In this document: piece by piece, positions 5,208 to 59,924 of the stretch
Layout of the letters: each line of letters opens with the position of its first letter
Position numbering within the stretch: position 1 is the first letter of the stretch
Origin: Oculina patagonica
Lineage: Eukaryota
Length of the DNA: 64,000 nt
Assembly: GCF_052425735.1 (NCBI RefSeq)
Contig: NC_135770.1
Location: 8,680,001 to 8,744,000 of the forward strand
Direction: 5' to 3'
The notes under the pieces: generated by a model
The model's input: only the letters and a program-made list of their open reading frames with translations
Told to the model about the DNA's origin: nothing
The model's database searches: none
Made by a program: the position numbers and the translations under genes

Positions 5208-6677
5208 TTAAAAATTGTTAAGTTTCTTATAAATGTTTGGGAATGCTACGTGTTCATTAATAGCGTTTCCATCTCGGACTGAGTGCCACGCTTCGAGGAA
5301 AAGTCTTTGTCTCCAAACTGAAGACCGGTCGATAATGTCAACATTTTTCAGATCAATTTCATGATCGTTGAGCAAATGGTGTTCGGCCAATAGGGAATTT
5401 CTGTCCATTGTTGTTATCGCTTTAGCATGTTCTTTGATGCGTGTTTTGAGTGCGCGCGAGGTCTGGCCAATGTAAACACACGCACAGTCTTTGCATTTGA
5501 TTTTATATACAACACCTTTCGACGACTCTTCGCTGATTTTATCTTTGGGTTTTTTCAAAATATTGGCGATGGAACGGATGGGCTTGTGAGCCACTTTGAC
5601 GTTAAAACCTTTGAGAACTCTTGAGATTCTTTCAGAAAAACCCTTGGCGTACGGTAGAACAACCAAACCTCGCTGTTCAACAACGTTGGCACCACTTTTT
5701 TGTTCGGCATTGGATTGACGACCATTACGAATAAAATTGATGGGATAATTGTTCGCTGCCAGCGCATTCAATACACGATTAGATTCAGATGACACTTCCT
5801 CCTCAGTGGATGGGATGTTCTTAGCCCGATCCATAAGAGTGCGTACAACAGAGTGTTTATGTTGCGTATGGTGGTATGAATTGAAGTCTAGATAGCGGTC
5901 GGTATGAGTGGCTTTTCTGTAAACAGAAACGGCTATCGAACCATCCACTTGCCTCGTTGTCTTAGTGTCCAAGAAAGCGATTGAACCTTCTGTTTCCACT
6001 TCGATGGTGAATTTGATGTGCTGGTTAATCGAGTTTAGGTGCGAATGAAATTCATCTACAAATTCTTTTTTCAGACACACATGACTGTCGTCGACATATC
6101 TAAACCACCATTTAGGTGGGTGTGGAGCCGAGGAGAGGGCCTTTTCTTCAACGTATTCCATGACCAGATTGGCTAAAATGGCGCTGACTGGTGAACCCAT
6201 AGGACAGCCAAAAATCTGTTTGTAGTTTGTTCCTTGAAAAACGAAGAAGTTACTGTCAAGAACGAATTCTAAGAGTTTGATAATGTTCTCTACGGATAAA
6301 TTTGTTCTTTCAGATGACGAAGAGTCAGAATAGAGTCTCTCTTTGACGACTTCCACGGCTAGATTGGACGGGATACAGGTAAACAGAGATACAACGTCGA
6401 AAGATACAAAGATCTCGTCAGGATTGACTGTCAAGGTGCGAATCTTCTCCACAAAAGACACACTGTTCTTAACTGTGTATTTGTTGTTCTGAAGCGGTGA
6501 CAAGATGTTGGCGAGGTGTTTGGATAATTGGTAGGTGGGGGACCCAATGGCGCTTGTGATAGGTCTGAGAGGGACGTCTGCCTTGTGGATTTTAGGAAGC
6601 CCGTAAAACGAGGCTGGAATGGCATCGGTACTGTGGAGTTTGTAGTAAAGTTTGGGGTCCAGCTGTTTCTTGCTGCT
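5208..6677 (-). CDS. PLE reverse transcriptase + GIY-YIG endonuclease (N-terminally truncated, frame intact)
   Basis: The frame is open upstream of 6503 and encodes FYGLPKIHK..PLRPI. RT motifs SFDVVSLFT, GCPMGSPVS and RYVDD follow, then YRKATHTDRYL and the GIY-YIG region GVVYKIKC..C..VYIGQT.R.L..R..EH. Confidence 0.93.
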   Translation of the reverse strand, partial: SSKKQLDPKLYYKLHSTDAIPASFYGLPKIHKADVPLRPITSAIGSPTYQLSKHLANILSPLQNNKYTVKNSVSFVEKIRTLTVNPDEIFVSFDVVSLFTCIPSNLAVEVVKERLYSDSSSSERTNLSVENIIKLLEFVLDSNFFVFQGTNYKQIFGCPMGSPVSAILANLVMEYVEEKALSSAPHPPKWWFRYVDDSHVCLKKEFVDEFHSHLNSINQHIKFTIEVETEGSIAFLDTKTTRQVDGSIAVSVYRKATHTDRYLDFNSYHHTQHKHSVVRTLMDRAKNIPSTEEEVSSESNRVLNALAANNYPINFIRNGRQSNAEQKSGANVVEQRGLVVLPYAKGFSERISRVLKGFNVKVAHKPIRSIANILKKPKDKISEESSKGVVYKIKCKDCACVYIGQTSRALKTRIKEHAKAITTMDRNSLLAEHHLLNDHEIDLKNVDIIDRSSVWRQRLFLEAWHSVRDGNAINEHVAFPNIYKKLNNF

Positions 6678-8992
6678 GTCTTGCTGCTAGAATTCCGTAA
6701 TTGTTATTTTGAAATCGCATCTTTGCACTTCTTACATAACTTGAGACCAATGGGAGATACATGACTTAGTATTTCTATAATTTAATTTTTCTAGCGTTTT
6801 CGTAGTTTTTCTAGCGTATTTGTTTGTTTCAGTATACATATAAACGTTGTTATGACCAGTCCGTTTTTTGGACTATACCGTTGTTTTTGCTTGATGTTTT
6901 GGTTTATCAAATCAAATAGGAATCATGAAATAATGTATTGCCGCAAATTGTAAAGTTCATAGTTTTTTTCCATCTGTTTTCTGTGGAGTAAAGTTATGAA
7001 GCAAAATCGTTGATTTTAACAATATCTCCTGGCTTATTCTCTGATTCACTTTTTAGCAGTGCATTTCCCAGATTTATGTCGATCCTTTGAAGGTGTAGAC
7101 AAGAAGTTTGATCCAGGCCTAACACAAACCAATCCTTTAATCCTGCAAACACCCTCATTAGTTATGTATCACGTTTTGATTCACATGTATCGCAAAACAC
7201 GAGATACTAGATCACGTTATTGTTTTGTTTACATTTTTTCTTTCGAAAAGCGTTTTACTTTTTGTAATGAACAATATAAAAAAGAGCTAATCTCACAAGC
7301 GTTCTCATTGGTTTAAACAGCGTACTTTATGAGACTACAAAGCACGCAGCTTAAGGGGACGATTAAGACGGTACGATTTTGCCTTCGATTTTTGCGTGCG
7401 ACACGCTTAACCATCGTCTGCCATTTGTGTGCGCGTGCAGCTTGAAGATCATTTCAGATCTCCCTTTTTTTCGCAAACGACGAACATACTGGCCATAACA
7501 ACGATATATCAGAAAATTATAGAAATACTAAGTTTTGTAAGAAGCGCAAAGATACGCTTTCAAAAAATAACAATTACCAGAATTCTAGTTGGTACAGTCA
7601 AACAACTTAACTATTAATTCAGATCTCGTTTTTATTGATATTTACATTATTTCCAATAACTGTAGTCAATACTCTTTACACTCGCATTTTAATTGTACTA
7701 CAAGACACGGATATCATCCTAAAATAGTTATAATACATTATTGTTTTCCAAAGTGAAATAAATTACATGTTTTAAGAGTCGCTTATACACTCCTCGTACA
7801 GGGAAGAAAAAAAAAAGGCCCTGAAAAAGTGTGCTTTGAAAGTAAGTCTTATGACAAGGCTCGCGTCAAAGCGATCAGTTTTCCTTCACATTCTGGCTGT
7901 GAACTGCTGATACTTTTTAAAAGTCGTTCAGTCTTTCTTTAGTTCCATAGTTCCTTTAGGAAACTGCAAGGGGAAAGGTTGGTGTAGTATCACAGTTTTA
8001 TTTTAATACAGCTAGCACGTAACTGCCTCTCCTGCAGACATTCAAAACCATCAAATGTTATTTAATGTCCGCTTATGAAGTCCTATTCGCCATGTTGAAT
8101 TCTCTATCGGCTCGACTACCGCCAACAGGACATCTTGACTAGAGATCTCATGATTTTGTCGACTTGGCTCGCTGTCGGACATCGCTCTGCTCTCAGTACT
8201 GCTTCGCTGTGTCTCTTGAATGAGCGTATTATAGAGGATTCTAGCCATCTGCTTGGGTAGCTGCTCCGCTATGGAAGGGCTCTTTTTTCGTATTCTGGTC
8301 ATCTTGTTGTTTTTCTGAACGTTTTCCAGACGTAGGTGACAGAGAAATTTACTCCTTTCGCTTCTTTGCAGTTTAGTTTGGTGTTGTTGGAGTAGTTGGC
8401 AATCAAATATTTGTGTAGCAACTTTTAAACGTTCTCGGATGGCAGTTGTGAAATCACTGGTTCTTTCGGCTGCCGGTCTAGTTTAAGAATGCCCTTTCAC
8501 GAGCAAGGCTTGCGGCTTATAAACACGTTGTTTTGCATCTCAATTCTTTTCTTCTTTTGTCTGGAGTCTTTAACAAAAGCCTAGACTTTGAGAAAAACAA
8601 CTTTGCCGCATGATAGCCAGTCTTAAGTCACCTTGTAAAGAAACGAAAAAGTCATTTTGCCCGGTCATTTTTTCATGTTCCGCACAGATGTAAGAAGAAA
8701 GTGTCTGACATTTACCTGTTGTCTTGGAAAACGAAAAATCTGATTACCTGTCGAACACAAGTTGACAATGTACTGTACAAAACACACTCATTGTTACTGA
8801 CCGTTATTAACAAACAAATGGCATAAGTTAATTTGATTGTTTCTCGGCATTGTAAGTGCATTATCTTAAGGGTATACTCTTGGGAAATACCAGTATGAAA
8901 GACCTAAAAAAAATAAGTCGTTCATTAAAGTATTCATGCATGCGCAGTGTTATTTTGTGTAGGTAACGTAAGGAACTTTCTAATAGTATACC

Positions 8993-9846
8993 AGGCGCCA
9001 TTGGATGGTAAAGATTACGATAGAATACCTTTAAATAAGCTCTCTTGCAAATCGGCAACAGAATTCCTTGTTAAAAAAAAGTTTTTAACACCTACTGCTG
9101 AAAAAAGGATGGTAAAAGCAAATTTGAATGAGAAAACAATACAACTCATTTATAGCCTTCCTTTCAAAGTCACTAAGGACACCAGACTTGCCATCTTTCA
9201 ATTTAAAATTATTCATCATATTCTGCCAACAAATTCAACGCTTTTTAGAGATGCACTGAAAGAAACAGATAAATGCCATCTATGCTCTGATAGACAAACA
9301 CTTACTCATCTTTTTGCTACCTGTTTGAACGTTAAAAGCTTTTGGTCTCACTATACTAATTGGTGGAATTCCAAAAACTCTGAGCCAATAACTCTTGATG
9401 AAAACATGATTATATACGGTGTTACCAATGACTTCTCTCGTCGACTTGGTTTAAACCTCTGCTTGATTATCGCAAAACAGTATATTTACACAGCCTCTAG
9501 AAAAGAAGAAGAGTACTACTGGGAAGCTTTCATGGCCATCCTTACAAGCAAAATTCAAATAGAGAAGCATAAATCTAAGAAACAGATACAGCTGTAACCC
9601 TCAACATTAAATATAGTATTTAAAAAGGCCAAAAAAAAAAAAAAATAGTCAGCCACGCTACCTTTCCTCTGTCCTTTTTTTTTTTTTTTTTGTTATTTTC
9701 TTTGTTATTTATTTATTTATCAATTTATTTTTGCATGCCCTCTGTTTAACTTAAATAATGCTTTTTTAAGTAAGCTATGTATTGTAATGTATTGTATTGT
9801 CATTGTTAATAAATAAACTGCTATTTAAAAAAAAAAAAAAAAAAAA
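8993..9846 (+). mobile_element. 5'-truncated L1/Tx1-type LINE (ORF2 C-terminal zinc-binding region, 3' UTR, poly(A))
   Basis: The ORF to 9597 has FQFKIIHHILPTN..C..C...QTLTHLF..C..V..FW (zf-RVT-like). AATAAA-like signals and an A-run lie at 9827-9848. The TSD AATAGTATACC occurs at 8982-8992 and 9847-9857. Confidence 0.93.
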
Positions 9847-43512: not shown

Positions 43513-45204
43513 ATGATTCCGCAAGTTCGAGTAAGCAAGCCAATGGATGGTTTAACTTCAAGAAAATGCAGACAGCGGGAAGAAAATGTTACTTTGAGGA
43601 ACGTCGTTAGTCAAATAAATTTGTCCAGTGAGAAAATGGTCGCGAACACTGTCAAAAAAGCGGCCATTTTAGGGAAACTACACCAAGCTAGTATACACGA
43701 TTTTGCGTCCGCGGGAGAGACAAGAGATCCACACGAAGCCATCTTTGAAATGAAGTCCATGCGAAAAAGTTTGCAAAATCATCTGAAAAACGACGGGCAC
43801 AAGACATTAAGTCCTGAAGGAAAGTTGAGACAATTTTCGGCAAGAAAACCGCCGGTAGGTCAGCGAGGGACTTCAGCAATTTATTCAGGAAGATTATCAA
43901 ACGCTTCATCTTATACGGGTGTTTTTATAAAGAGGAATGAAAATGAGAAAAAGGACTACAGAAAGGAATCACAGGGGAGACCATCGACCACCAGGCAAGA
44001 AGTGATAAATCGCCAAGATGAATTTACGCGGAATGTTTACAGTCGACATATGACCACGCCAACTCCACGCATAACTGTAGAAAACAACGCTAAAGATTAC
44101 ACCGAAATTAATTTCAAAATAAACTCGCAATCGGTAGAAACTGAAACAGAAACTTCAAGGAAAGAAAGTCACACTGAAAACAAATCAGACGACAACGACG
44201 AAGTGTTCTTTAGCGCAAGCGACGCAAGAAACAGCGCGTTAAGTGCGCCACAAGAAGATATTTTGCTGGAAGAAAAAGAAGTGTTGAACAAATTCACTGA
44301 TCCGCAATTAAAGGAATCGCTGCAAAATATAATCAAGAGACGGCGAAGCAGCGTACGCTTTGTAAAATCCGAGTCGGGATACGACATGGTAAACCTTGAG
44401 AACACAATTAGCGAACATCTGGAGGAAAATACAGATCAATATAAACAAGAACAGCAACAACAATTAGCGGATAGCGAAAATGCAGTCGAGGAGGCAAAAA
44501 ACAGCGAAAACCGAAGTGTTCAATCGGCGTCTTCTCGGCGAGTTTCGGCAAATCGCGAGCGCACGACGAGCGCGGGAACTATAACTTCGGAGAAAAGCCA
44601 CGTCGCGGCCAATCCTCGGCAACCTCGAACGCGCTCACGAAAAACTGGAAGTCAAGAACAAGGAATTTCCACAGCGAGGCGCATTTCGTCGGCTAGGTCA
44701 TGTGTGAGTACAGCGTCAAATCAGACGCAAAGAAGTTTAAGTTCTCCCATCCTGAGAAGGCGAAGACCCGAATTCCAGACAGAAGAGACCAGAATTATTC
44801 GGCCTGCTACTGCAAAGGGATACGTACCCAATTTAACCAACAGGAAAGTCTCGCGCAAGTATTCAGCGCTATCTTGTCCTGAAATTTTACAGCGTAGAGA
44901 CCAAGCCAAAAATTTGGCTCAGGTTAAAATGATCCGAGAATTCCTTTTAATGTACACCAAAGTCGCAACAAAGAAAGACGAAGCACTTCCCAAAAGCGGG
45001 CCTGTTCGTATGATGAGTCAAACACCGGAATTGGTCATCAAGAGCGCCATTGGTCAGTTCTTAACGTGTGCTTTTCCGTCTGGGGAAAGTGAGGAATGGA
45101 CTGGATTAAGCGCCAGGTCGAAAAAGGAACGATACGAGGAACAACAGCGCTCGAAGTTGTTAAGGATAAAGATTTGCATGAAACATTTGGCCTCTGTAGC
45201 TTGA
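43513..45204 (+). CDS. Orphan protein, 563 aa, single coding exon, largely disordered and rich in R/S/E
   Basis: Uninterrupted 1.7 kb ORF with helical-looking N- and C-terminal segments and multiple RRxS/RPxT motifs; no recognisable domain. Confidence 0.85.
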   Translation: MIPQVRVSKPMDGLTSRKCRQREENVTLRNVVSQINLSSEKMVANTVKKAAILGKLHQASIHDFASAGETRDPHEAIFEMKSMRKSLQNHLKNDGHKTLSPEGKLRQFSARKPPVGQRGTSAIYSGRLSNASSYTGVFIKRNENEKKDYRKESQGRPSTTRQEVINRQDEFTRNVYSRHMTTPTPRITVENNAKDYTEINFKINSQSVETETETSRKESHTENKSDDNDEVFFSASDARNSALSAPQEDILLEEKEVLNKFTDPQLKESLQNIIKRRRSSVRFVKSESGYDMVNLENTISEHLEENTDQYKQEQQQQLADSENAVEEAKNSENRSVQSASSRRVSANRERTTSAGTITSEKSHVAANPRQPRTRSRKTGSQEQGISTARRISSARSCVSTASNQTQRSLSSPILRRRRPEFQTEETRIIRPATAKGYVPNLTNRKVSRKYSALSCPEILQRRDQAKNLAQVKMIREFLLMYTKVATKKDEALPKSGPVRMMSQTPELVIKSAIGQFLTCAFPSGESEEWTGLSARSKKERYEEQQRSKLLRIKICMKHLASVA

Positions 45205-53600: not shown

Positions 53601-56510
53601 AATTTCATTCTGACATGTTATGTTATTTTAATTTTCATTATTATTTGTCTGCTCACTCAATCTGTTTGTGGCATGCCACTATCTCCTTTGCTTGAGATGC
53701 AGAACAATTAACTACTGACATTTTATTTATCATTGCAAAGTCTTTTTACATTGTTATTAGCTGTAGACTGCTTATGCTTGGATTGCCAAAATTTGTTGTT
53801 TCAACCTATTATTATCCATATGCTCAATTGCGTAAATTTACTGATCTAAAGAGCATTGGTAAATTATAATAGCCCAATAAAATTTTTTGATATATTAAAA
53901 TCAGCCTAAAACAAAGACCTCAGGACGAGGCCCCGGGGACTACTAATGGATAGAGTTTGTGGGGTATTCCCTGGAGCCTCATTGTGATGTTATTGTTTTA
54001 GACTGATTTTAAAATATCAAAATTGGGCTATTTTGGCAGGATCCTAGGTCTGCAATGCGTGCATAGAGACATCATTTTCATTTTCACATATTACTATAAC
54101 AGTATTTAGGAGATGTGCATTGGGAAATGAACAATGGGGAAAATTTCATAAACAAGAAAGGTGTTTCATCCTGTAGTGCTACATAATCATTTCTATTCAA
54201 TTAATGTTTAGGTGAAGTGTGCTCAGTTTCCAGTCCAAATAGCGCTTTTGATTTCACCAAACCCAAGCCCATTGGACAAGACATAGACAAAGTTGGAGGC
54301 TATGATCACAACTACTGTCTGCCAAAGAGCAAGGAATTCTGTGCAGAGTAAGTGCATGTACCGGTAGTCAACAAAATTTATCTGTATCCTACTTTGAACT
54401 ACAGAGGCCTAAGGATTATACTTTGTGTCCCAGACTCCGGATCAAGCGGTCCAGGTGGGGCTAGCAGGGCACTAGGTTACCTAGTGCCCTAGCTAGCATA
54501 GCATAGGTGTGTTTTGGGCAAGACACTTACTCTCATAGTGCCTTCTCCACCCAGGGCGAGGCGTACAATGGGTACCGGTGCATAGGGAGTGCATACCTTC
54601 CTAAACTTTAGGAAGGTTCATGTTTGCACTACTGGTGTCATAGCATCTTGTTGTTGTCATGCTGACAATAAAAGGCAACAGTTTGAAACATTTTATATGG
54701 AGTAATTCACTAAAACCAAATACAGTAGTTATGTAGCTATGTTGGTCAGAATGAGTCTGTGAGCCTCAGTCAAAATTCTGAGCAAACATTTGTTGAGACG
54801 TTCTCTGACAAGAATTGAAAAACAGTGTTCTCTACCGCTATCACGAGAACTATGCAGCAGTCTCAAGCATGTCAAATTTTGGAGACTACCAAGTATTGCG
54901 AGTGGCTTGAACTTTTCCTTGCAAGACTTAGCCCAGATTATAAGCTGTCAGTGGCAGCTTTGCATAAAGGGAACAGGTCTGCAGTGATTTATTATTGTTT
55001 AGCCACAAAGATTTTTGAGCTGGCTACTCAATATTAGATGCTCAGTTAAAAATGCTAAAGAAATGTCACTCAATGTAAGGTTATTTGTGAATGCGTGGGG
55101 GTGGGGGGGGGGAGGGGGGATTGCAAAGCATGTAAATCTCACTTGGGAAATCAATGCTTGCAGGCGTTTAATTTTCTGAGAAAAAGAGATTGCTTTTTGG
55201 TAGCCTGTATTGTTCTTGCTTTTGACGTTCCAGAGTGTACCATCCCTCAAGTGGGCGTGTTGTTAAAATGTTCACTGATCAGCCAGGGGTGCAGTTTTAC
55301 ACTGGCAATGGACTGGATGGCACCCCTGGCAAGGGAGGTGTGCCTTACAACAAGTATGGCGCCTTTTGCTTGGAGGCTCAGAACTACCCTGATGCCATTA
55401 ACCAGGTCAGATAAGCAAACAGAATTAAAATGTTATACATGTACGTATTCTTATATATCCCTGACACAATTACTCCTCAACCAATGAACTTATTTTCTAT
55501 CTTCATTTTGAATGAATAAATTAATATTATAAATTTGTCATTCTTTTTTTAATTTTTCATTTAAGAATGTAGCACCTACACACTGTAAAATATTGGGATT
55601 ATATCTAAAAGGCTGATAACTGGCATGGGGTTATTAATTTTACCAGCTAAGATAGGCCTTGTCTTTGATTGAAATTTCACTAGATCTTAGCTATGTCCCT
55701 GCTTATTACACACCTCTGTGACTGACCAATATAATTTTTATTTTTGTGTAGTTCCTCCCAATAATAATAAATTATTATCCATACATTGTACCTCCACCAT
55801 CAAAGACCCCCCCCCCAATTAGCTTCATACATTTCCTTAATTAAAAGTTTTTGGCCTTTGAGACCCCTCCCACCCCCAGGAATTTCCAATCCCTTCTGTG
55901 GGGTAGTATGGACATTTTCTGGGACTGCACATTTTAAATTTGAAGTGGGTGTATTTTTTTTCTTTGGGGATTATACACAAAGTTTTTTTGATCAAAAATT
56001 ACCTGACTCACTGCATTTGTAGCTCAGGTGAGTATGCAAGTTTGAGACACTACAAAGCAAAATTAGAGAATCTTATAATCATTTACTAAATATGCTCCAT
56101 GATTTAAAACAGAAAATCCTGCGCTTCCCAACGCTTTATACCTCTACGAATCAGAAAGAGCCGCCATCTTAAAGCGAAAGACCCGGGAACGAGGGTGTCG
56201 GGCGCGGCCAGCCCGACAGGCAACATTAACAAATCACCGGTTCAAATAATCCACTCCTTACTTATAACACCCCCCCCCCCTCCCCAACCCAGAGCTGGCG
56301 AGGCCCGCGAGTCACGTATTACTAGTTTAAAACAGAAAATTGATTATCTGACCTCCACCCCTTCCTGCACCTGACTAGAATAAGATCATCATTTTTTAAT
56401 TTGATTCATTGTTTATGTTTTAATTACAGCCAAACTTTCCAAGTCCTATTCTGCGCCCTGGAGAAACCTACAAACAGAAAACAGTCTACAAATTTGACGT
56501 GAAGAAGTGA
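47638..56510 (+). CDS. GALM: Galactose mutarotase (aldose 1-epimerase), 8 exons, 341 aa: 47638-47777, 49021-49067, 50591-50745, 52059-52271, 53473-53554, 54212-54347, 55234-55405, 56430-56510
   Basis: All introns are GT-AG and phase-compatible; total 1026 nt. Motifs [32 protein letters not shown] (catalytic His), [29 protein letters not shown] (catalytic Glu) and LRPGETY. Confidence 0.97.
48466..48727. mobile_element. MITE in GALM intron 1
   Basis: TIR ATGCACCTGTCAAT.TTAAGCCCCAGG / CCTGGGGCTTAACATTGACAGGTGCAT. Confidence 0.8.
49110..49288. mobile_element. MITE in GALM intron 2 (related copy at ~55746-55931)
   Basis: Imperfect TIR TGTGTAGTTCC..TATCCATAC / GTATGG.CATTTTCTGGGAC..CAC; both copies share CCCCAGGAATTTCCAATCC.TTCTGTGGGG. 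Confidence 0.7.
49373..49548. mobile_element. Tc1/mariner (pogo-like) MITE
   Basis: TA TSD; perfect TIR CAGTGGAACCCCGATATAACGAT; internal ATCGTTATATCG repeats. Confidence 0.9.
49615..50195. mobile_element. Long palindromic MITE (~230-bp arms)
   Basis: AATTGG.CGTTCC.AG.TTGCGCAGGGAACTGGGG... pairs with ...CCCCAGTTCCCTGCGCAACCTTGGAACGACCAATT. Confidence 0.85.
50924..51168. mobile_element. CCC-terminated MITE nested in a GG..GGATC-terminated MITE (~50759-51186)
   Basis: TIR CCCAGGGGGGTACT.CAGTATACATGACGGGG / CCCCGTCATGTATACTGCAAGTACCCCCTGGG. It splits the host end AAAATC|TTGGATCCACCC; a host-family copy lies at ~62899-63162. Confidence 0.75.
52955..53428. mobile_element. Interspersed non-autonomous element in GALM intron 4
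   Basis: Hairpin GCGGCCCGAAGGGCCGC; terminal inverted motifs TTTAGCTGAGC..AGCGGAGCCCC / GGGGAGCTCCGCT..GCTTGGCTAAA. Confidence 0.6.
54430..54582 (+). mobile_element. Degenerate SINE fragment in GALM intron 6
   Basis: GACTCCGGATCAAGCGGTCCAGG head remnant and TGGGCAAGACACTTACTCTCATAGTGCC..CCACCCAGG..AATGGGTACCG core. Confidence 0.65.
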
Positions 56511-57699
56511 GCCAGAAATCAATGGAATAAACTGAAGCTGTACTGTCCTAATATTAAACTACAGCTCGGTTCATTTTTTAAAGATAACAATAAATAGGTA
56601 ATATAGGTATTATTAATTAATAATAAAGGAAGTGAATTAAGATAAGGGACTGTCTCTAATGAGAATAAAACAGCAATTTTTATGTGAAGGGAATCATTTT
56701 TTGTAAAGGGACTGTACATGTAGTTTGACTACATGATACATGTTTTGTACTAGCAGGTCTTTTTAAAGTCTGTTTTGAAAAACGAGGGGTACAAAGTGCC
56801 TTAACTTAAAAACTGGGGTTACATTTATATTGGTTAGAAATATTAATATAAGTTGCGCAGAGTGAGGGAAAATGGGCAAAATTGTTAATGGTGCTGGGTA
56901 GAATACATGATTGTACTCTGTAATTTGAAACAGATACAATAAATAGTTTATGGACATTGAAAAGCAGTGTAGTTTATTTGGATGTTTTAGTCTGTACCAT
57001 GTTCTTGTATAATGTGGGAGGAGCATACACATGTAATTTTTTCAAACACCAAGAGATGTATCAGACTGTTAAATATATAAAAGTAATACGAAATTGTCAA
57101 ATAACCAGTAAGGAAGTACATTCAATCCTGGGCATAGGGCTGATCGAGAGACATTGAGACTCCACTTGAAAAAACCACACTCATGATGTAACTCTCCAGA
57201 GATCAACTTCTAACATTAATTGTTGTTTGTTTTTTTTTACGTTTTGCATACATGTGTTTGTGCACACATAAGCGGTTCCGGGCGGCGCGCCCCCGGGGCC
57301 CCCCCCCCCCCCCCCCCCCGGAACCAATCAGGGACACTGTGTAGATCTCTCCAGAGCTGCGTTACCAGTATGGTATGTTTGGTTAAATCTTAGAACTCTT
57401 GCAAGCAGAGAGAAGTCTGCTCTGTTCTGACAACTATCTGTTAGTCTGTGAGAAGGCTCCCCGTCTTGGCTCCAAAAAAAAACAAAAATTTTTCCAAGGG
57501 TCAGACAGCTTAGAGTACAATTTACTACACCTGTATGATGGATTTTGGAACAATATAATTTTTAATTAAAAGTTCTGCAAAACTTGTGCTATAATGTCAA
57601 CATTTAAATATCACCGGTATGAATGTGTAATGTAACTGCTGTGTTTGGTGTTTGTTGGTGTTTATTGTCACTAAAATTTAAAATAAACTACATCTCATT

Positions 57700-59430
57700 T
57701 TACTCCACTCTGTCACCTTCCTTATGTCCTGTAAAGGTCACTTCTCTCCTCACTTTAGAGAATGCCATTTTCATGCACTGTAATTCGTGATCTCTGAAAA
57801 CAGACAGATCCTTATTTTTTAGCGCTTTCTCCATTGCATCAAATATTAACGTTGTTTCAAAGCTGCACTTAGAGAATACAGATGCCAACTCTGGAATAAG
57901 TTCAGGTTTATGTTCCAGCAAGTTTCTATCCAAAACTTCCCTTTCCATCTTCTTGAATAATTTATATGAACCAGCTGACGCACAGCTGAATCCATGTAAA
58001 ACCATGCAAAGCTCTTTATCAGAGAAAATGCTGACATTGCACAAAACTTCCTTCTCGACCCTGCTAAAAAATCCTGAGTTAGAAACTGTAGACTTTCCAA
58101 GTGCCCAGACTAGCTGACTCAACTGTTCCACTTTGAAAAACCTCAAATCCCTGGACAGGATTTCCTCTTGGCATGCATTGAAGAGATTGGCACTAAAATG
58201 GCCTGACTCAGCAAAGGACCACAAAATAAGTGCCAATTCTTGATTTCTTAAATGTGAGATGCCTCGAAGATGGAGTTCTTCCTCCACAATATCAAAGATT
58301 GCGTCAACCTTTGAGCACATTTTGGCAAATGACCAAACTAACATTGAGAGTTCCTCAGTGTCATAACCCTGAACACCTTGTTGTATTACTTGAGCACCTA
58401 AGCTGTCAAAAAATTCAGTGCTTCCTTCAATGTCTGCGCCAGCTTTTGCAAATGACTGAAGTAATGTCTTGATACTGTAGTCACTAAGGTCCACCATTGG
58501 CCGCTTCAGAATCTCTTGTGCTGTGATTTGAAAGAGCCTGTCACATTGTACATCCTTCTGCGTGAATGACCACAAAAACTGTGCCAGCTGTGCACTGCTG
58601 AACTTTTTCACATCTCTAAGCAAAATTTCTTCTTGGAATTTTCCATACAGCTCCCTGCTTCCATTTCCAGTTTTGCTGAAAGACCACAATGCTCCAGCCA
58701 GTCCACGATTTTCAAAGTCACTCATCTTGAGTTGCCCCTCTAGAATTCTCTGCTCAACCAAAGTAAAAAACTGTGATCTTTTCAAATCAAGTGATGCAAA
58801 ACCATTCAGAAGCTGACAAATGGATGGTGCTCTGAATGAACTTGCATCTCGTCGCAAAATTTCCTTTTCGCATTCAGAAACAAACCATGCGACATGCTCC
58901 CTTAACTTTCCCAAGGACCAGATAATGCTGGCAAGGTCACGAGCCTTGCACCTATCAAGCTCGGCTGCTATACTGTTAAGCAAAACAATGAAAACATGTT
59001 TTTGCTTTTTCAATGCCTTTTTTGTAGAAACAAAGTTCTTCTTTGGTGGACTAACAGCAAACCTGGCTAGATGGTGCAGAATAGTTATTCGATTCACTTG
59101 TGTCATCCCAGCTGAATCCTTGAAATTATCATACAAATAGAGATATTCATCTGCAGTCCTTACAGCTGTGATATTCTTAGCAAGAGCCTTCACAGTAACA
59201 GAGTTGAAAGCGCAAGGGACTATAATTGGCAAGGATAGCCTTGCATTTTCACTTGTGACTCCTTTAAGCTGTGCTGTTTTGTACCACGGCAAGTAGCTCC
59301 CTGTGAAATACATGTACCTTGCTTGTGAGGAGAAACATTTCTCTGATTGTTTAAGAAGAGTGATTTGCCGGATGCTTTTTAGTGAAGAGAACAATTCCGT
59401 CACAAAACGGAAGGACCTTAAGCTGTACAT
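57700..59430 (-). CDS. Putatively mitochondrial helical-repeat (OPR/FASTK-like) protein, 576 aa, single coding exon
   Basis: N-terminus is rich in R/S/K/F and poor in acidic residues (MYSLRSFRF...). About 11 repeats of ~38 aa with consensus F...EL..L.WSFAK......LF....EEIL.R. A 5'-UTR intron is predicted from donor 59924 to acceptor 59503; AATAAA on the minus strand at 57661-57666. Confidence 0.85.
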   Translation of the reverse strand: MYSLRSFRFVTELFSSLKSIRQITLLKQSEKCFSSQARYMYFTGSYLPWYKTAQLKGVTSENARLSLPIIVPCAFNSVTVKALAKNITAVRTADEYLYLYDNFKDSAGMTQVNRITILHHLARFAVSPPKKNFVSTKKALKKQKHVFIVLLNSIAAELDRCKARDLASIIWSLGKLREHVAWFVSECEKEILRRDASSFRAPSICQLLNGFASLDLKRSQFFTLVEQRILEGQLKMSDFENRGLAGALWSFSKTGNGSRELYGKFQEEILLRDVKKFSSAQLAQFLWSFTQKDVQCDRLFQITAQEILKRPMVDLSDYSIKTLLQSFAKAGADIEGSTEFFDSLGAQVIQQGVQGYDTEELSMLVWSFAKMCSKVDAIFDIVEEELHLRGISHLRNQELALILWSFAESGHFSANLFNACQEEILSRDLRFFKVEQLSQLVWALGKSTVSNSGFFSRVEKEVLCNVSIFSDKELCMVLHGFSCASAGSYKLFKKMEREVLDRNLLEHKPELIPELASVFSKCSFETTLIFDAMEKALKNKDLSVFRDHELQCMKMAFSKVRREVTFTGHKEGDRVE

Positions 59431-59924
59431 TTTAATATTCTAGACTTCTAGCAGATGTTGTGTTCTAGAATACAAATGTGAAACTCCCAGCTACCAGAGA
59501 CCCTGACAAACAGAAAAACAAACGTTACATTTATATTTACACTTGACATGTCTTATAGTCCTGCAGGGTGGTGGAGGGGATAATTGCTTGATCTTTAGTA
59601 CAACTAAACAACAAACTAAGAAAACTGTACCAAAACTCGCACGGGAATTTGACAGAGTTTGGAAACTACTTTCGATCAAGCTCTACTCATGCAACAAGGA
59701 AAACCATAATTTGGCGATACTAGGCTCGGAGGATGTGGCTATAATACATTAATTTGTGTTAGGAAGTACTTACTCAAAGCATTATGTCATAAAATTCGAA
59801 AAAAAGTCCCTGGATTACAAAGGTTATTTTTTCCCGTCGGTGCGCCGCCATCTTGGAAAACAACGCTGAGAACAGCCTGGGAACAAGATTGTAGTTTCGT
59901 TTCCAGTCCCAATCTTCTACTTAC

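What the first reader, a model, noticed from the sequence alone, without database searches (positions are those of the whole stretch)
57700..59430. Animal protein with regular 38-aa (octotricopeptide-like) repeats, a mitochondrial-type leader and no RAP domain
Seen: about 11 tandem repeats, mostly exactly 38 aa (e.g. FENRGLAGALWSFSKTGNGSRELYGKFQEEILLRDVKK; LRNQELALILWSFAESGHFSANLFNACQEEILSRDLRF). The protein ends right after the repeats with no recognisable RAP domain, and the coding region has no introns. Established: regular OPR/HPR proteins are organellar RNA-binding factors in green algae and alveolates; animal FASTK proteins have degenerate repeats plus RAP; hexacoral mtDNA encodes almost no tRNAs and has group I introns, so tRNA punctuation cannot account for most mRNA processing. 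Inference: a sequence-specific mitochondrial RNA-binding factor, possibly part of an uncharacterised anthozoan mt-RNA processing or splicing system.
Basis: partly seen in the sequence, partly recalled or inferred. Interest (0 to 1): 0.7.

Follow-up and report, generated by a model that had tools for sequence, protein, structure and literature searches.

The report
Coral RAP-less OPR-type helical-repeat gene
A stony-coral nuclear gene without introns encodes a protein of eleven regular 38-residue helix pairs, of the kind that handles RNA inside mitochondria and chloroplasts of algae and parasites, but without the nuclease-like end domain found in every known animal relative; it belongs to an uncharacterised family of at least eight such genes in corals and sea anemones.

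Summary
Window 57700-59430 (minus strand) is one open 576-codon frame. It has a 38-residue periodicity about 9 SD above shuffles. AlphaFold2 (pLDDT 83.6) gives a disordered leader (residues 1-72), a helical cap, and 11 helix-pair repeats. There is no beta strand, so no RAP fold.

The nearest solved and predicted structures are all organellar helical-repeat proteins: trypanosome RESC6/RESC8, OPR/HPR proteins of Chlamydomonas, Polytomella and Toxoplasma mitoribosomes, Tbc2, and the helical parts of FASTKD1-5.

Pfam finds only weak FAST_1 matches. FAST_2 and RAP are absent from all 34 aligned family members. About 40% of the non-coral relatives I scanned carry RAP.

The gene is colinear, without gaps, with 2.3-kb contigs of a related coral. 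It evolves under purifying selection (dN/dS about 0.3). The same genome holds at least seven more intronless paralogues, six of them on the same chromosome. The subfamilies are old, and one reaches sea anemones.

The leaders look like mitochondrial presequences because they have almost no acidic residues, but no targeting predictor was available.

My best reading is a mitochondrial OPR/HPR-type RNA-binding factor that works without its own nuclease. RNA binding, its targets and its localisation are inferred, not shown. It is a new animal member of a known superfamily, and databases list it as uncharacterised.

The parts
57700..59430 (-). Complete single-exon coding sequence, 576 codons plus TAA stop
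   Evidence: The public gene model P0001 is identical except that it lacks the last 10 residues.
59215..59430 (-). Residues 1-72: disordered N-terminal leader, presequence-like (probable mitochondrial targeting peptide plus linker)
   Evidence: pLDDT is below 50 over residues 1-72. In the first 30 residues of 55 family members, K+R averages 4.8 and D+E 0.47, against 3.9 and 4.0 in the body. The leader's dN/dS is 0.58 against 0.28 for the body.
58966..59193 (-). Residues 80-155: N-terminal helical cap of five helices (degenerate repeats)
   Evidence: AlphaFold2 helices H80-89, 93-103, 111-126, 131-142 and 144-155, with pLDDT above 89.
57733..58950 (-). Residues 161-566: array of 10 full and 1 partial helix-pair repeats of 37-41 (mostly 38) residues. 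Consensus: F-x3-(E/Q)-L-x3-L-W-S-F-(A/S)-K ... (L/F)-F ... E-E-(I/V)-L-x-R-D
   Evidence: Lag-38 periodicity, unit alignment, helix pairs, weak FAST_1 match at residues 372-418.
57700..57732 (-). Residues 567-576 (TGHKEGDRVE) plus stop: short unstructured tail directly after the last repeat, leaving no room for a RAP domain
   Evidence: pLDDT is below 50 over residues 569-576. The same tail occurs in homologue P0004.
59440..59442 (-). In-frame TAG four codons upstream of the ATG, which bounds the reading frame at its 5' end
57661..57666 (-). AATAAA polyadenylation-signal-like hexamer 36 nt downstream of the stop
   Evidence: Contigs of runs X1 and X4 stop near 57694-57711.
57456..59628 (-). 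Stretch colinear, without gaps, with the 2333/2330-nt contigs L010/L011 of a related coral; this is the likely extent of the unspliced transcript
   Evidence: Two independent runs gave contigs with the same ends, 89% nucleotide identity, and the ORF at 372-2066 of the contig.

Best explanation
This is a real, intronless nuclear gene of a scleractinian coral. It encodes an alpha-solenoid of the OPR/HPR/FAST_1 (RESC6-like) superfamily: a cleavable-looking mitochondrial leader, a helical cap, and 11 regular 38-residue helix-pair repeats, with no FAST_2 and no RAP/PD-(D/E)XK nuclease-like domain. It is one of at least eight old paralogues that are conserved across stony corals and reach sea anemones. 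Its relatives suggest the following mechanism. The protein is imported into mitochondria. It binds single-stranded mitochondrial RNA along the inner face of the solenoid, roughly one repeat per nucleotide or short stretch. It then stabilises, delimits or presents particular transcripts or rRNA segments. Any cleavage would be done by a separate enzyme. Shown here: the gene structure, the repeat anatomy, the fold class, the absence of RAP and FAST_2, the paralogy, and purifying selection. Inferred: mitochondrial import, RNA binding, sequence specificity, and any link to the tRNA-poor, intron-bearing hexacoral mitochondrial genome.
For: The ORF and its periodicity are confirmed. AlphaFold2 gives pLDDT 83.6 and pTM 0.75, an all-helical model over residues 80-560, and a disordered segment 1-72. 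Foldseek against PDB is led by RESC6 (3e-9), Toxoplasma mitoribosome HPR proteins, Chlamydomonas mL115 (TM 0.64), RESC8 and Polytomella mitoribosome proteins, followed by PPR10 and designed PPR-RNA complexes. Swiss-Prot models give the helical parts of FASTKD1-5 (6e-9 to 2e-6), Tbc2 (1.5e-8) and Raa3. AFDB clusters give 'RAP domain-containing' and 'FAST kinase leucine-rich' proteins at 4e-16 to 4e-9. By sequence, RESC6 scores 5.5e-6 with the single protein and 2.8e-14 with the profile. FAST_1 matches 27 of 34 members at E <= 0.01, best 6.9e-9. RAP is absent from 34 of 34 members, from the window, and from the paralogue flanks. It is present in 8 of 19 non-coral relatives scanned. The leader is nearly free of acidic residues in 48 of 55 members. 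dN/dS is 0.22-0.32. Eight single-ORF paralogues were found in the genome, and they fall into well-supported old subfamilies that include Pocillopora, Montipora, Acropora, Desmophyllum and Actinia. Some repeat positions vary between repeats but are conserved between orthologues (positions 5, 7, 8 and 16), as expected for ligand-reading positions. RNA binding by the helical region of FASTK and HPR proteins is reported in PMC6212722 and PMC5737537.
Against: There is no direct evidence for localisation or RNA binding. The mature proteins are not markedly basic: body pI is 8.2 here, the family median is 7.2, and paralogue L004 is 5.5. Some solved relatives are structural subunits of respiratory complexes, not RNA binders: Tetrahymena NDUTT15 and COXTT27, and Polytomella ASA3. 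Transcription rests on contigs whose RNA origin is only a guess. The window protein's own FAST_1 score (19.9 bits) is below Pfam's cut-off of 27.4.
Confidence: 0.6

Rival explanations
1. The protein is mitochondrial but works as a structural or assembly protein: an accessory subunit or assembly factor of the mitoribosome or of a respiratory complex. It would act as a scaffold, not as a sequence-specific factor for mRNA processing or stability.
For: The profile search of PDB finds Tetrahymena complex I and IV accessory subunits NDUTT15 (2.6e-10) and COXTT27, and Polytomella ATP-synthase ASA3 (2e-4), beside the mitoribosomal proteins mL115, mL123 and mS140. The bulk charge is near neutral.
Against: Those lineage-specific subunits are short (about 210-325 aa), whereas this protein has a full 11-repeat solenoid like RESC6, mL115 and Tbc2. 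OPR/HPR proteins in mitoribosomes mainly hold fragmented rRNAs. To my knowledge hexacoral rRNAs are not fragmented (not tested here). Eight diverged paralogues fit different ligands better than one scaffold.
Confidence: 0.2
2. It is simply an animal FASTK-family gene whose descendants lost FAST_2 and RAP. That would make it a degenerate FASTKD orthologue and not an OPR-type protein in its own right.
For: There are FAST_1 matches in 27 of 34 members. Foldseek matches the helical parts of all five FASTKDs. FASTK proteins arose early in animals; Trichoplax has three (PMC5737537).
Against: There is no FAST_2 or RAP in any of 34 members from at least eight subfamilies. FAST_1 scores much higher in protist and algal OPR-RAP proteins (up to 1.7e-42), so it is not diagnostic of animal FASTKs. 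Protist and algal proteins match better by fold (4e-16) than vertebrate FASTKDs (6e-9). The repeats are far more regular than the 'degenerate' FASTKD repeats described in PMC6212722.
Confidence: 0.1
3. The family entered an anthozoan ancestor by horizontal transfer from an alga or alveolate, for example a dinoflagellate associate, and then duplicated.
For: All paralogues are intronless. The closest non-cnidarian matches by profile and fold are algal and dinoflagellate proteins: Mesostigma and Polarella, and the AFDB clusters. No named non-anthozoan animal appeared among the hits.
Against: Identity to any non-cnidarian protein is only 18-25%. High profile scores on long, regular repeat proteins are inflated by multiple repeat matches. 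Names are sparse in the databases, so absence from other animals is not shown. The family predates the split of Scleractinia and Actiniaria. G+C content and gene context are typical of the coral genome.
Confidence: 0.08
4. It is not mitochondrial: a cytosolic or nuclear helical-repeat scaffold whose N-terminus only resembles a presequence.
For: No predictor or experiment was available. The window protein itself has two acidic residues in its first 30.
Against: An acid-poor, basic, Ser/Leu-rich leader that is predicted disordered is conserved as a property, though not as a sequence, across 48 of 55 members and all own-genome paralogues except L005, which may be 5'-truncated. Every solved homologue is a mitochondrial protein.
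Confidence: 0.07

Closest known systems
Octotricopeptide repeat (OPR) proteins of green algae (Tbc2, Raa3, and the mitoribosomal mL113/mL115 of Chlamydomonas), and their heptatricopeptide (HPR) subset in alveolates
   Same: Tandem repeats of about 38 residues, each an antiparallel helix pair that builds a solenoid. An organelle-type leader. RAP-less members exist. The fold matches are strong: mL115 with TM 0.64 and Tbc2 at 1.5e-8. The helix-A core L-W-S-F-A-K is similar.
   Different: This one is in an animal. It lacks the PPPEW signature of Chlamydomonas OPRs (read from the sequence). Its period is 38, not the 37 of HPRs. Sequence identity is only 12-20%.
Trypanosome RESC6/RESC8 (Pfam RESC6 PF26188, RESC8 PF26172), components of the mitochondrial RNA-editing substrate-binding complex
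   Same: RESC6 is the best sequence hit in PDB (5.5e-6 with the protein, 2.8e-14 with the profile) and the best Foldseek hit. Precomputed Pfam marks list RESC6 on the coral proteins. UniRef names an Acropora orthologue 'RESC6 protein domain-containing'.
   Different: To my knowledge no U-insertion/deletion editing or guide RNAs are known in cnidarian mitochondria. Identity is 16-17%. The depositors call RESC6 a RAP domain-containing protein, and this protein has no RAP.
Animal FASTK family (FASTK, FASTKD1-5)
   Same: Animal, nuclear-encoded helical-repeat proteins with FAST_1-type repeats, and mitochondrial in the FASTK family (inferred only for this protein). Foldseek matches their N-terminal and central helical regions.
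   Different: The family is defined by FAST_1 + FAST_2 + RAP on one polypeptide (PMC5737537). FAST_2 and RAP are absent here. The repeats here are regular instead of degenerate. The genes are intronless, with at least eight paralogues.
Pentatricopeptide repeat (PPR) proteins
   Same: They are organellar alpha-solenoids that bind single-stranded RNA along the inner face. PPR10 and designed PPRs appear among the weaker Foldseek hits (5e-4 to 1e-3).
   Different: Their period is 35, not 38. There is no PPR Pfam match. They are a different sequence family.

Membership tests
Canonical FASTK family (PMC5737537) | FAST_1 domain (PF06743) | tested here: inconclusive
   The window protein scores 19.9 bits (E 7e-4), below the 27.4-bit cut-off. 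27 of 34 family members match at E <= 0.01, best 6.9e-9.
Canonical FASTK family (PMC5737537) | FAST_2 domain (PF08368) | tested here: not met
   There is no match in the protein at E <= 10, in any of 34 members at E <= 0.01, or in the six-frame genome search (which has low power).
Canonical FASTK family (PMC5737537) | C-terminal RAP domain (PF08373, PD-(D/E)XK-like alpha/beta fold) | tested here: not met
   There is no Pfam match. AlphaFold2 shows no strand, and only 10 residues follow the last repeat. A RAP HMM built from 8 relatives finds nothing in the six frames of the window or the paralogue loci; the best E is 0.53.
OPR (octotricopeptide repeat) proteins | Tandem degenerate repeats of about 38-40 residues | tested here: met
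   The self-score peaks at lag 38, about 9 SD above shuffles. There are eleven units of 37-41 residues.
OPR (octotricopeptide repeat) proteins | Each repeat forms a pair of antiparallel helices that stack into a solenoid | tested here: met
   The AlphaFold2 model has 27 helices, two per unit, with pLDDT mostly above 90. The fold matches mL115, Tbc2 and Raa3.
OPR (octotricopeptide repeat) proteins | PPPEW-type motif of the Chlamydomonas consensus (mentioned as OPR-specific in PMC8190603) | tested here: not met
   The translated sequence has no PPPEW or PEW. The inter-repeat turn here is R-D-(L/V)-x-x-F.
OPR (octotricopeptide repeat) proteins | Organelle targeting and binding of specific organellar RNAs | not testable with these tools
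   Only indirect evidence is available: the composition of the leader and the organellar nature of all solved relatives.
HPR (heptatricopeptide repeat) proteins (PMC6212722) | 37-residue repeat matching the HPR motif | not tested
   No HPR model is available. The period here is 38, and only one unit has 37 residues. Toxoplasma mitoribosomal helical-repeat proteins are among the top fold hits.
RESC6-like domain (Pfam PF26188) | Significant match to the RESC6 model or to RESC6 itself | tested here: met
   PF26188 is not reported by the local Pfam scan. It is listed as precomputed 'weak' or 'faint' on the orthologues. T. brucei RESC6 scores 5.5e-6 with the single sequence and 2.8e-14 with the family profile, and it is the top Foldseek hit in PDB.
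PPR proteins | 35-residue PPR motifs (Pfam PPR families) | tested here: not met
   There is no PPR family. The period is 38. Only weak fold resemblance is seen.

The most novel reading that the evidence does not exclude
Hexacorals may have replaced, or largely supplemented, the RAP-bearing FASTK system of other animals. In its place they would use an expanded set of about 8-9 RAP-less, highly regular OPR-type proteins. Each would recognise a particular site on the polycistronic mitochondrial transcripts (gene junctions, mRNA ends, or the nad5 and cox1 group I introns). In a genome with only two tRNA genes, transcript ends would then be defined by protein 'caps' instead of tRNA punctuation, as in chloroplasts and apicomplexan mitochondria. 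This reading is compatible with three results: no RAP or FAST_2 match was found anywhere in the 529-Mb genome outside mobile elements; RAP-bearing queries recover only these paralogues; and the family resembles protist OPR-RAP proteins more than vertebrate FASTKDs. However, the genome-wide searches have low power for short domains split by introns.
Probability: 0.15. Interest if true: 0.75.

Novelty: new member of a known kind. Interest (0 to 1): 0.5.

Why it matters
Cnidarian mitochondrial genomes keep at most two tRNA genes (PMC11886574). The tRNA-punctuation route that matures most bilaterian mitochondrial mRNAs therefore cannot apply, and how their polycistronic transcripts are processed is an open question (PMC5474008). 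Hexacoral genomes also carry complex group I introns in ND5 and COI (PMC8146996, PMC6545197).

I found no paper in the searched library that names nuclear factors for these steps. This family gives concrete candidates: a small, conserved set of intronless genes that would be simple to clone because they have no introns, each a probable RNA-reading solenoid.

It would also be the first animal group of OPR/HPR-type proteins outside the RAP-bearing FASTK family. That bears on how helical-repeat RNA binders were gained, lost and expanded across eukaryotes.

If the proteins prove to be structural subunits instead, the family would be an animal example of solenoid recruitment into mitochondrial complexes, so far seen in ciliates and green algae.

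Tried and rejected
1. A spliced-on RAP exon. I searched the six-frame window and the paralogue flanks with a RAP HMM built from eight relatives and found only noise. The Pfam RAP search of the whole genome gave nothing at E <= 0.01. At E <= 10 it gave only fragments inside repeated large ORFs with DNA-polymerase-B-like motifs, which are mobile elements and not FASTK-like genes.

2. Genome-wide FAST_1 and FAST_2 searches returned nothing. They also missed the window gene's own weak FAST_1 match, so they have too little power to prove absence.

3. RNA evidence. No listed run is on record as RNA. Only contigs could be laid, at 88-99% likeness. They show no joints inside the ORF. In runs X1 and X4, coverage is confined to about 57694-59490. 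Neither point proves transcription.

4. A second homologue search with a profile of distant paralogues returned only unnamed orthologues of paralogue L007, so it did not widen the taxonomic range.

5. Bulk-charge test for RNA binding. The result was not supportive: pI is about 7-8.

6. DNA-level tandem repeats. None were found.

7. PPR membership was rejected (period 38, no Pfam match). The weak NCBIfam matches to the bacterial XopAD/skwp and PRK09169 repeat proteins look like repeat-level resemblance only.

8. A phylogeny against FASTKD1-5 was not done, because no FASTKD sequence was available through the tools and I did not type any from memory.
Full report
**1. The observation**

Window 57700-59430 on the minus strand is a single open frame of 576 codons.
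- An in-frame TAG lies four codons upstream of the ATG, at 59440-59442.
- An AATAAA lies 36 nt after the TAA stop.
- The BLOSUM62 self-score is highest at lag 38: 0.164, against -0.865 +/- 0.109 for shuffles, about 9 SD. Harmonics appear near 76-79 and 113-117.
- Hand-cut units aligned with MAFFT start at residues 161, 199, 239, 277, 315, 356, 394, 432, 469, 507 and 545. Their lengths are 38, 40, 38, 38, 41, 38, 38, 37, 38 and 38, plus a 22-residue partial unit.
- The consensus is F-x3-(E/Q)-L-x3-L-W-S-F-(A/S)-K ... (L/F)-F ... E-E-(I/V)-L-x-R-D.
- Tandem Repeats Finder sees nothing at the DNA level, so the repeats are old.

**2. Fold**

I ran AlphaFold2 on an alignment of the protein with 33 coral homologues (A1). 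It gave pLDDT 83.6 and pTM 0.75.
- Residues 1-72 and 569-576 fall below pLDDT 50.
- Residues 80-560 form 27 helices: five cap helices, then two helices per repeat.
- There is no strand. A RAP domain, which is a PD-(D/E)XK-like alpha/beta fold (PMC12687428, PMC8190603), is therefore absent. Only ten residues follow the last repeat.

**3. What it resembles**

- **Sequence, single protein against PDB:** T. brucei RESC6 at 5.5e-6, with Polytomella mL123 and Chlamydomonas mL115 as weaker hits.
- **Sequence, family profile against PDB:** RESC6 at 2.8e-14, then Tetrahymena NDUTT15, RESC4, mL123, Polytomella ASA3, mL115, COXTT27 and Toxoplasma mitoribosomal proteins. Every hit is mitochondrial.
- **Foldseek against PDB:** the same set leads (RESC6 at 3e-9; mL115 with TM 0.64). 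PPR10 and designed PPR-RNA complexes follow about five orders of magnitude lower.
- **Swiss-Prot models:** the helical parts of FASTKD1-5 (6e-9 to 2e-6), the founding OPR protein Tbc2 (1.5e-8), and Raa3.
- **AFDB fold clusters:** 'RAP domain-containing' and 'FAST kinase leucine-rich domain' proteins at 4e-16 to 4e-9, with 14-20% identity. Organism names are withheld, but the accession series look like protist and algal entries to me. That last point is from memory, not a tool result.
- **Pfam:** only FAST_1 is found. It is below threshold in the window protein (19.9 bits against 27.4) but present in 27 of 34 members (best 6.9e-9).
- **Precomputed marks and automatic names:** these place the orthologues in RESC6 (PF26188) and RESC8 (PF26172).

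So the protein belongs to the OPR/HPR/FAST_1/RESC6 superfamily of organellar helical-repeat proteins.

**4. No RAP and no FAST_2**

- Neither domain is found in the window protein or in any of the 34 aligned members.
- Among 19 long non-coral relatives drawn from the homology and profile searches, 8 carry RAP. One more carries DUF559/MTES_1575, a Vsr-like nuclease module.
- A RAP HMM built from those eight finds nothing in any frame of the 64-kb window or within 1.5 kb of the paralogues. The best E is 0.53.
- The orthologues all end at the same place, with the motif ELQxIKMAFxKVGRE followed by a short tail.
- Two contigs from independent runs of a related coral (2333 and 2330 nt, with the same ends) are colinear with window 59628-57456 without gaps. 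They carry the ORF with about 370 nt upstream and 270 nt downstream.
- No laid contig shows a joint inside the ORF.
- The public model P0001 equals the ORF minus its last ten residues.

**5. Not a single orthologue but a family**

A six-frame search of the 529-Mb genome finds seven further loci. Each is one open frame of 413-583 codons starting at ATG.
- Six are on the same chromosome as the window gene, and three of those lie within 165 kb.
- One is on another chromosome.
- In another species, two members lie 5 kb apart in tandem.

A maximum-likelihood tree of 54 sequences gives at least eight well-supported subfamilies.
- The window clade contains Pocillopora, Montipora and Acropora proteins, so it spans both major scleractinian lineages.
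- The clade of paralogue L007 is sister to Actinia tenebrosa proteins.
- All named members are 'uncharacterized' or 'hypothetical'.

I did not check this.

**6. Selection and targeting**

- dN/dS is 0.32 against the 89%-identical relative, split as 0.58 for the leader and 0.28 for the body. Against a Pocillopora-type orthologue it is 0.22.
- The first 30 residues of 55 members average 4.8 K+R and 0.47 D+E, against 3.9 and 4.0 per 30 residues in the body. 48 of 55 have at most one acidic residue there.
- The leader is predicted disordered.
- These properties fit a mitochondrial presequence, and corals have no plastid of their own. No dedicated predictor or experiment was available, so targeting remains an inference.

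**7. Mechanism**

In PPR, OPR, HPR and FASTK proteins the helical tract binds RNA (PMC6212722, PMC5737537). RAP-less members act by binding, protecting or presenting RNA.

In the coral repeats, positions 6, 13, 27 and 34 are structural, being hydrophobic and invariant. Positions 5, 7, 8 and 16 vary between repeats but are conserved between orthologues. This is the pattern expected for ligand-reading residues.

My best reading, at about 0.6, is a mitochondrial RNA-binding factor without its own nuclease.

Two points weigh against overconfidence:
- The mature proteins are not clearly basic. The family median pI is 7.2.
- Several solved relatives are structural subunits of complexes I and IV and of ATP synthase.

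The link to the tRNA-poor, intron-containing hexacoral mitochondrial genome (PMC11886574, PMC5474008, PMC8146996) is attractive but untested.

**8. Canonical FASTKs in this genome**

- Pfam RAP, FAST_2 and FAST_1 six-frame searches found nothing significant.
- The weak RAP-like fragments lie in repeated mobile-element ORFs.
- Two FAST_1+RAP proteins from other organisms recover only the RAP-less paralogues.
- These searches cannot see short domains split by introns, and they had no eukaryotic positive control.

I therefore treat 'corals lack RAP-FASTKs' only as the novel case, at a probability of about 0.15.

**9. Novelty**

The superfamily is known. So are RAP-less members in algae and alveolates. 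Automatic annotation already tags an Acropora orthologue with the RESC6 domain.

What seems unreported in the searched literature is a conserved anthozoan family of regular, RAP-less, intronless OPR-type genes. I file it as a new member of a known kind, of moderate interest. Its main value is as a set of candidates that are simple to clone for a real open question.

Noticed in passing
G000 C13: 1.75, 9.91, 11.52, 15.148, 15.176 and 15.311 Mb; C8: 13.80 Mb (loci L002-L009): There are seven further intronless paralogues of 413-583 codons. Six are on the same chromosome as the window gene, and three of those lie within 165 kb. All except L005 have presequence-like N-termini.
   Followed up: partly
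L031:10001-11734 and L031:16598-17818: In another species' 566-kb contig, two family members (577 and 406 aa) sit 5 kb apart on the same strand, so tandem clustering of the family is conserved.
   Followed up: no
window 5208-6503 (-) and 8947-9597 (+): One ORF has weak reverse-transcriptase plus GIY-YIG matches (a Penelope-like arrangement) and a second has a zf-RVT match. Both are retroelement remnants.
   Followed up: no
window 43513-45204 (+): A 563-codon ATG-initiated open frame has no Pfam match and no convincing Atlas neighbour (best score 0.80, recognition 1161). I cannot tell whether it is a real orphan gene.
   Followed up: partly
G000 C6:27.36 Mb, C2:7.56 Mb, C3:18.32 Mb, C8:28.90 Mb, C13:35.51 Mb (L013-L017): The only RAP-like fragments in the genome (E 0.06-0.4, RAP positions 20-56) lie in repeated ORFs of about 500-1380 codons. 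These also carry DNA-polymerase-B-like motifs, so they are copies of a large mobile element with a Vsr/RAP-like nuclease module. I observed them only.
   Followed up: partly
window 55797-55993 and 57176-57372 (includes a G run at about 57302-57320): Contig depth here is hundreds to thousands of times that of the flanks in all four laid runs, so these are high-copy dispersed repeats just downstream of the gene.
   Followed up: no
P0228 (Acropora cervicornis, 707 aa, named 'Zinc transporter ZIP9'): This protein sits in the same 90% cluster as 548-aa family members. It is probably a gene model that fuses a family member with a neighbouring ZIP9 gene.
   Followed up: no
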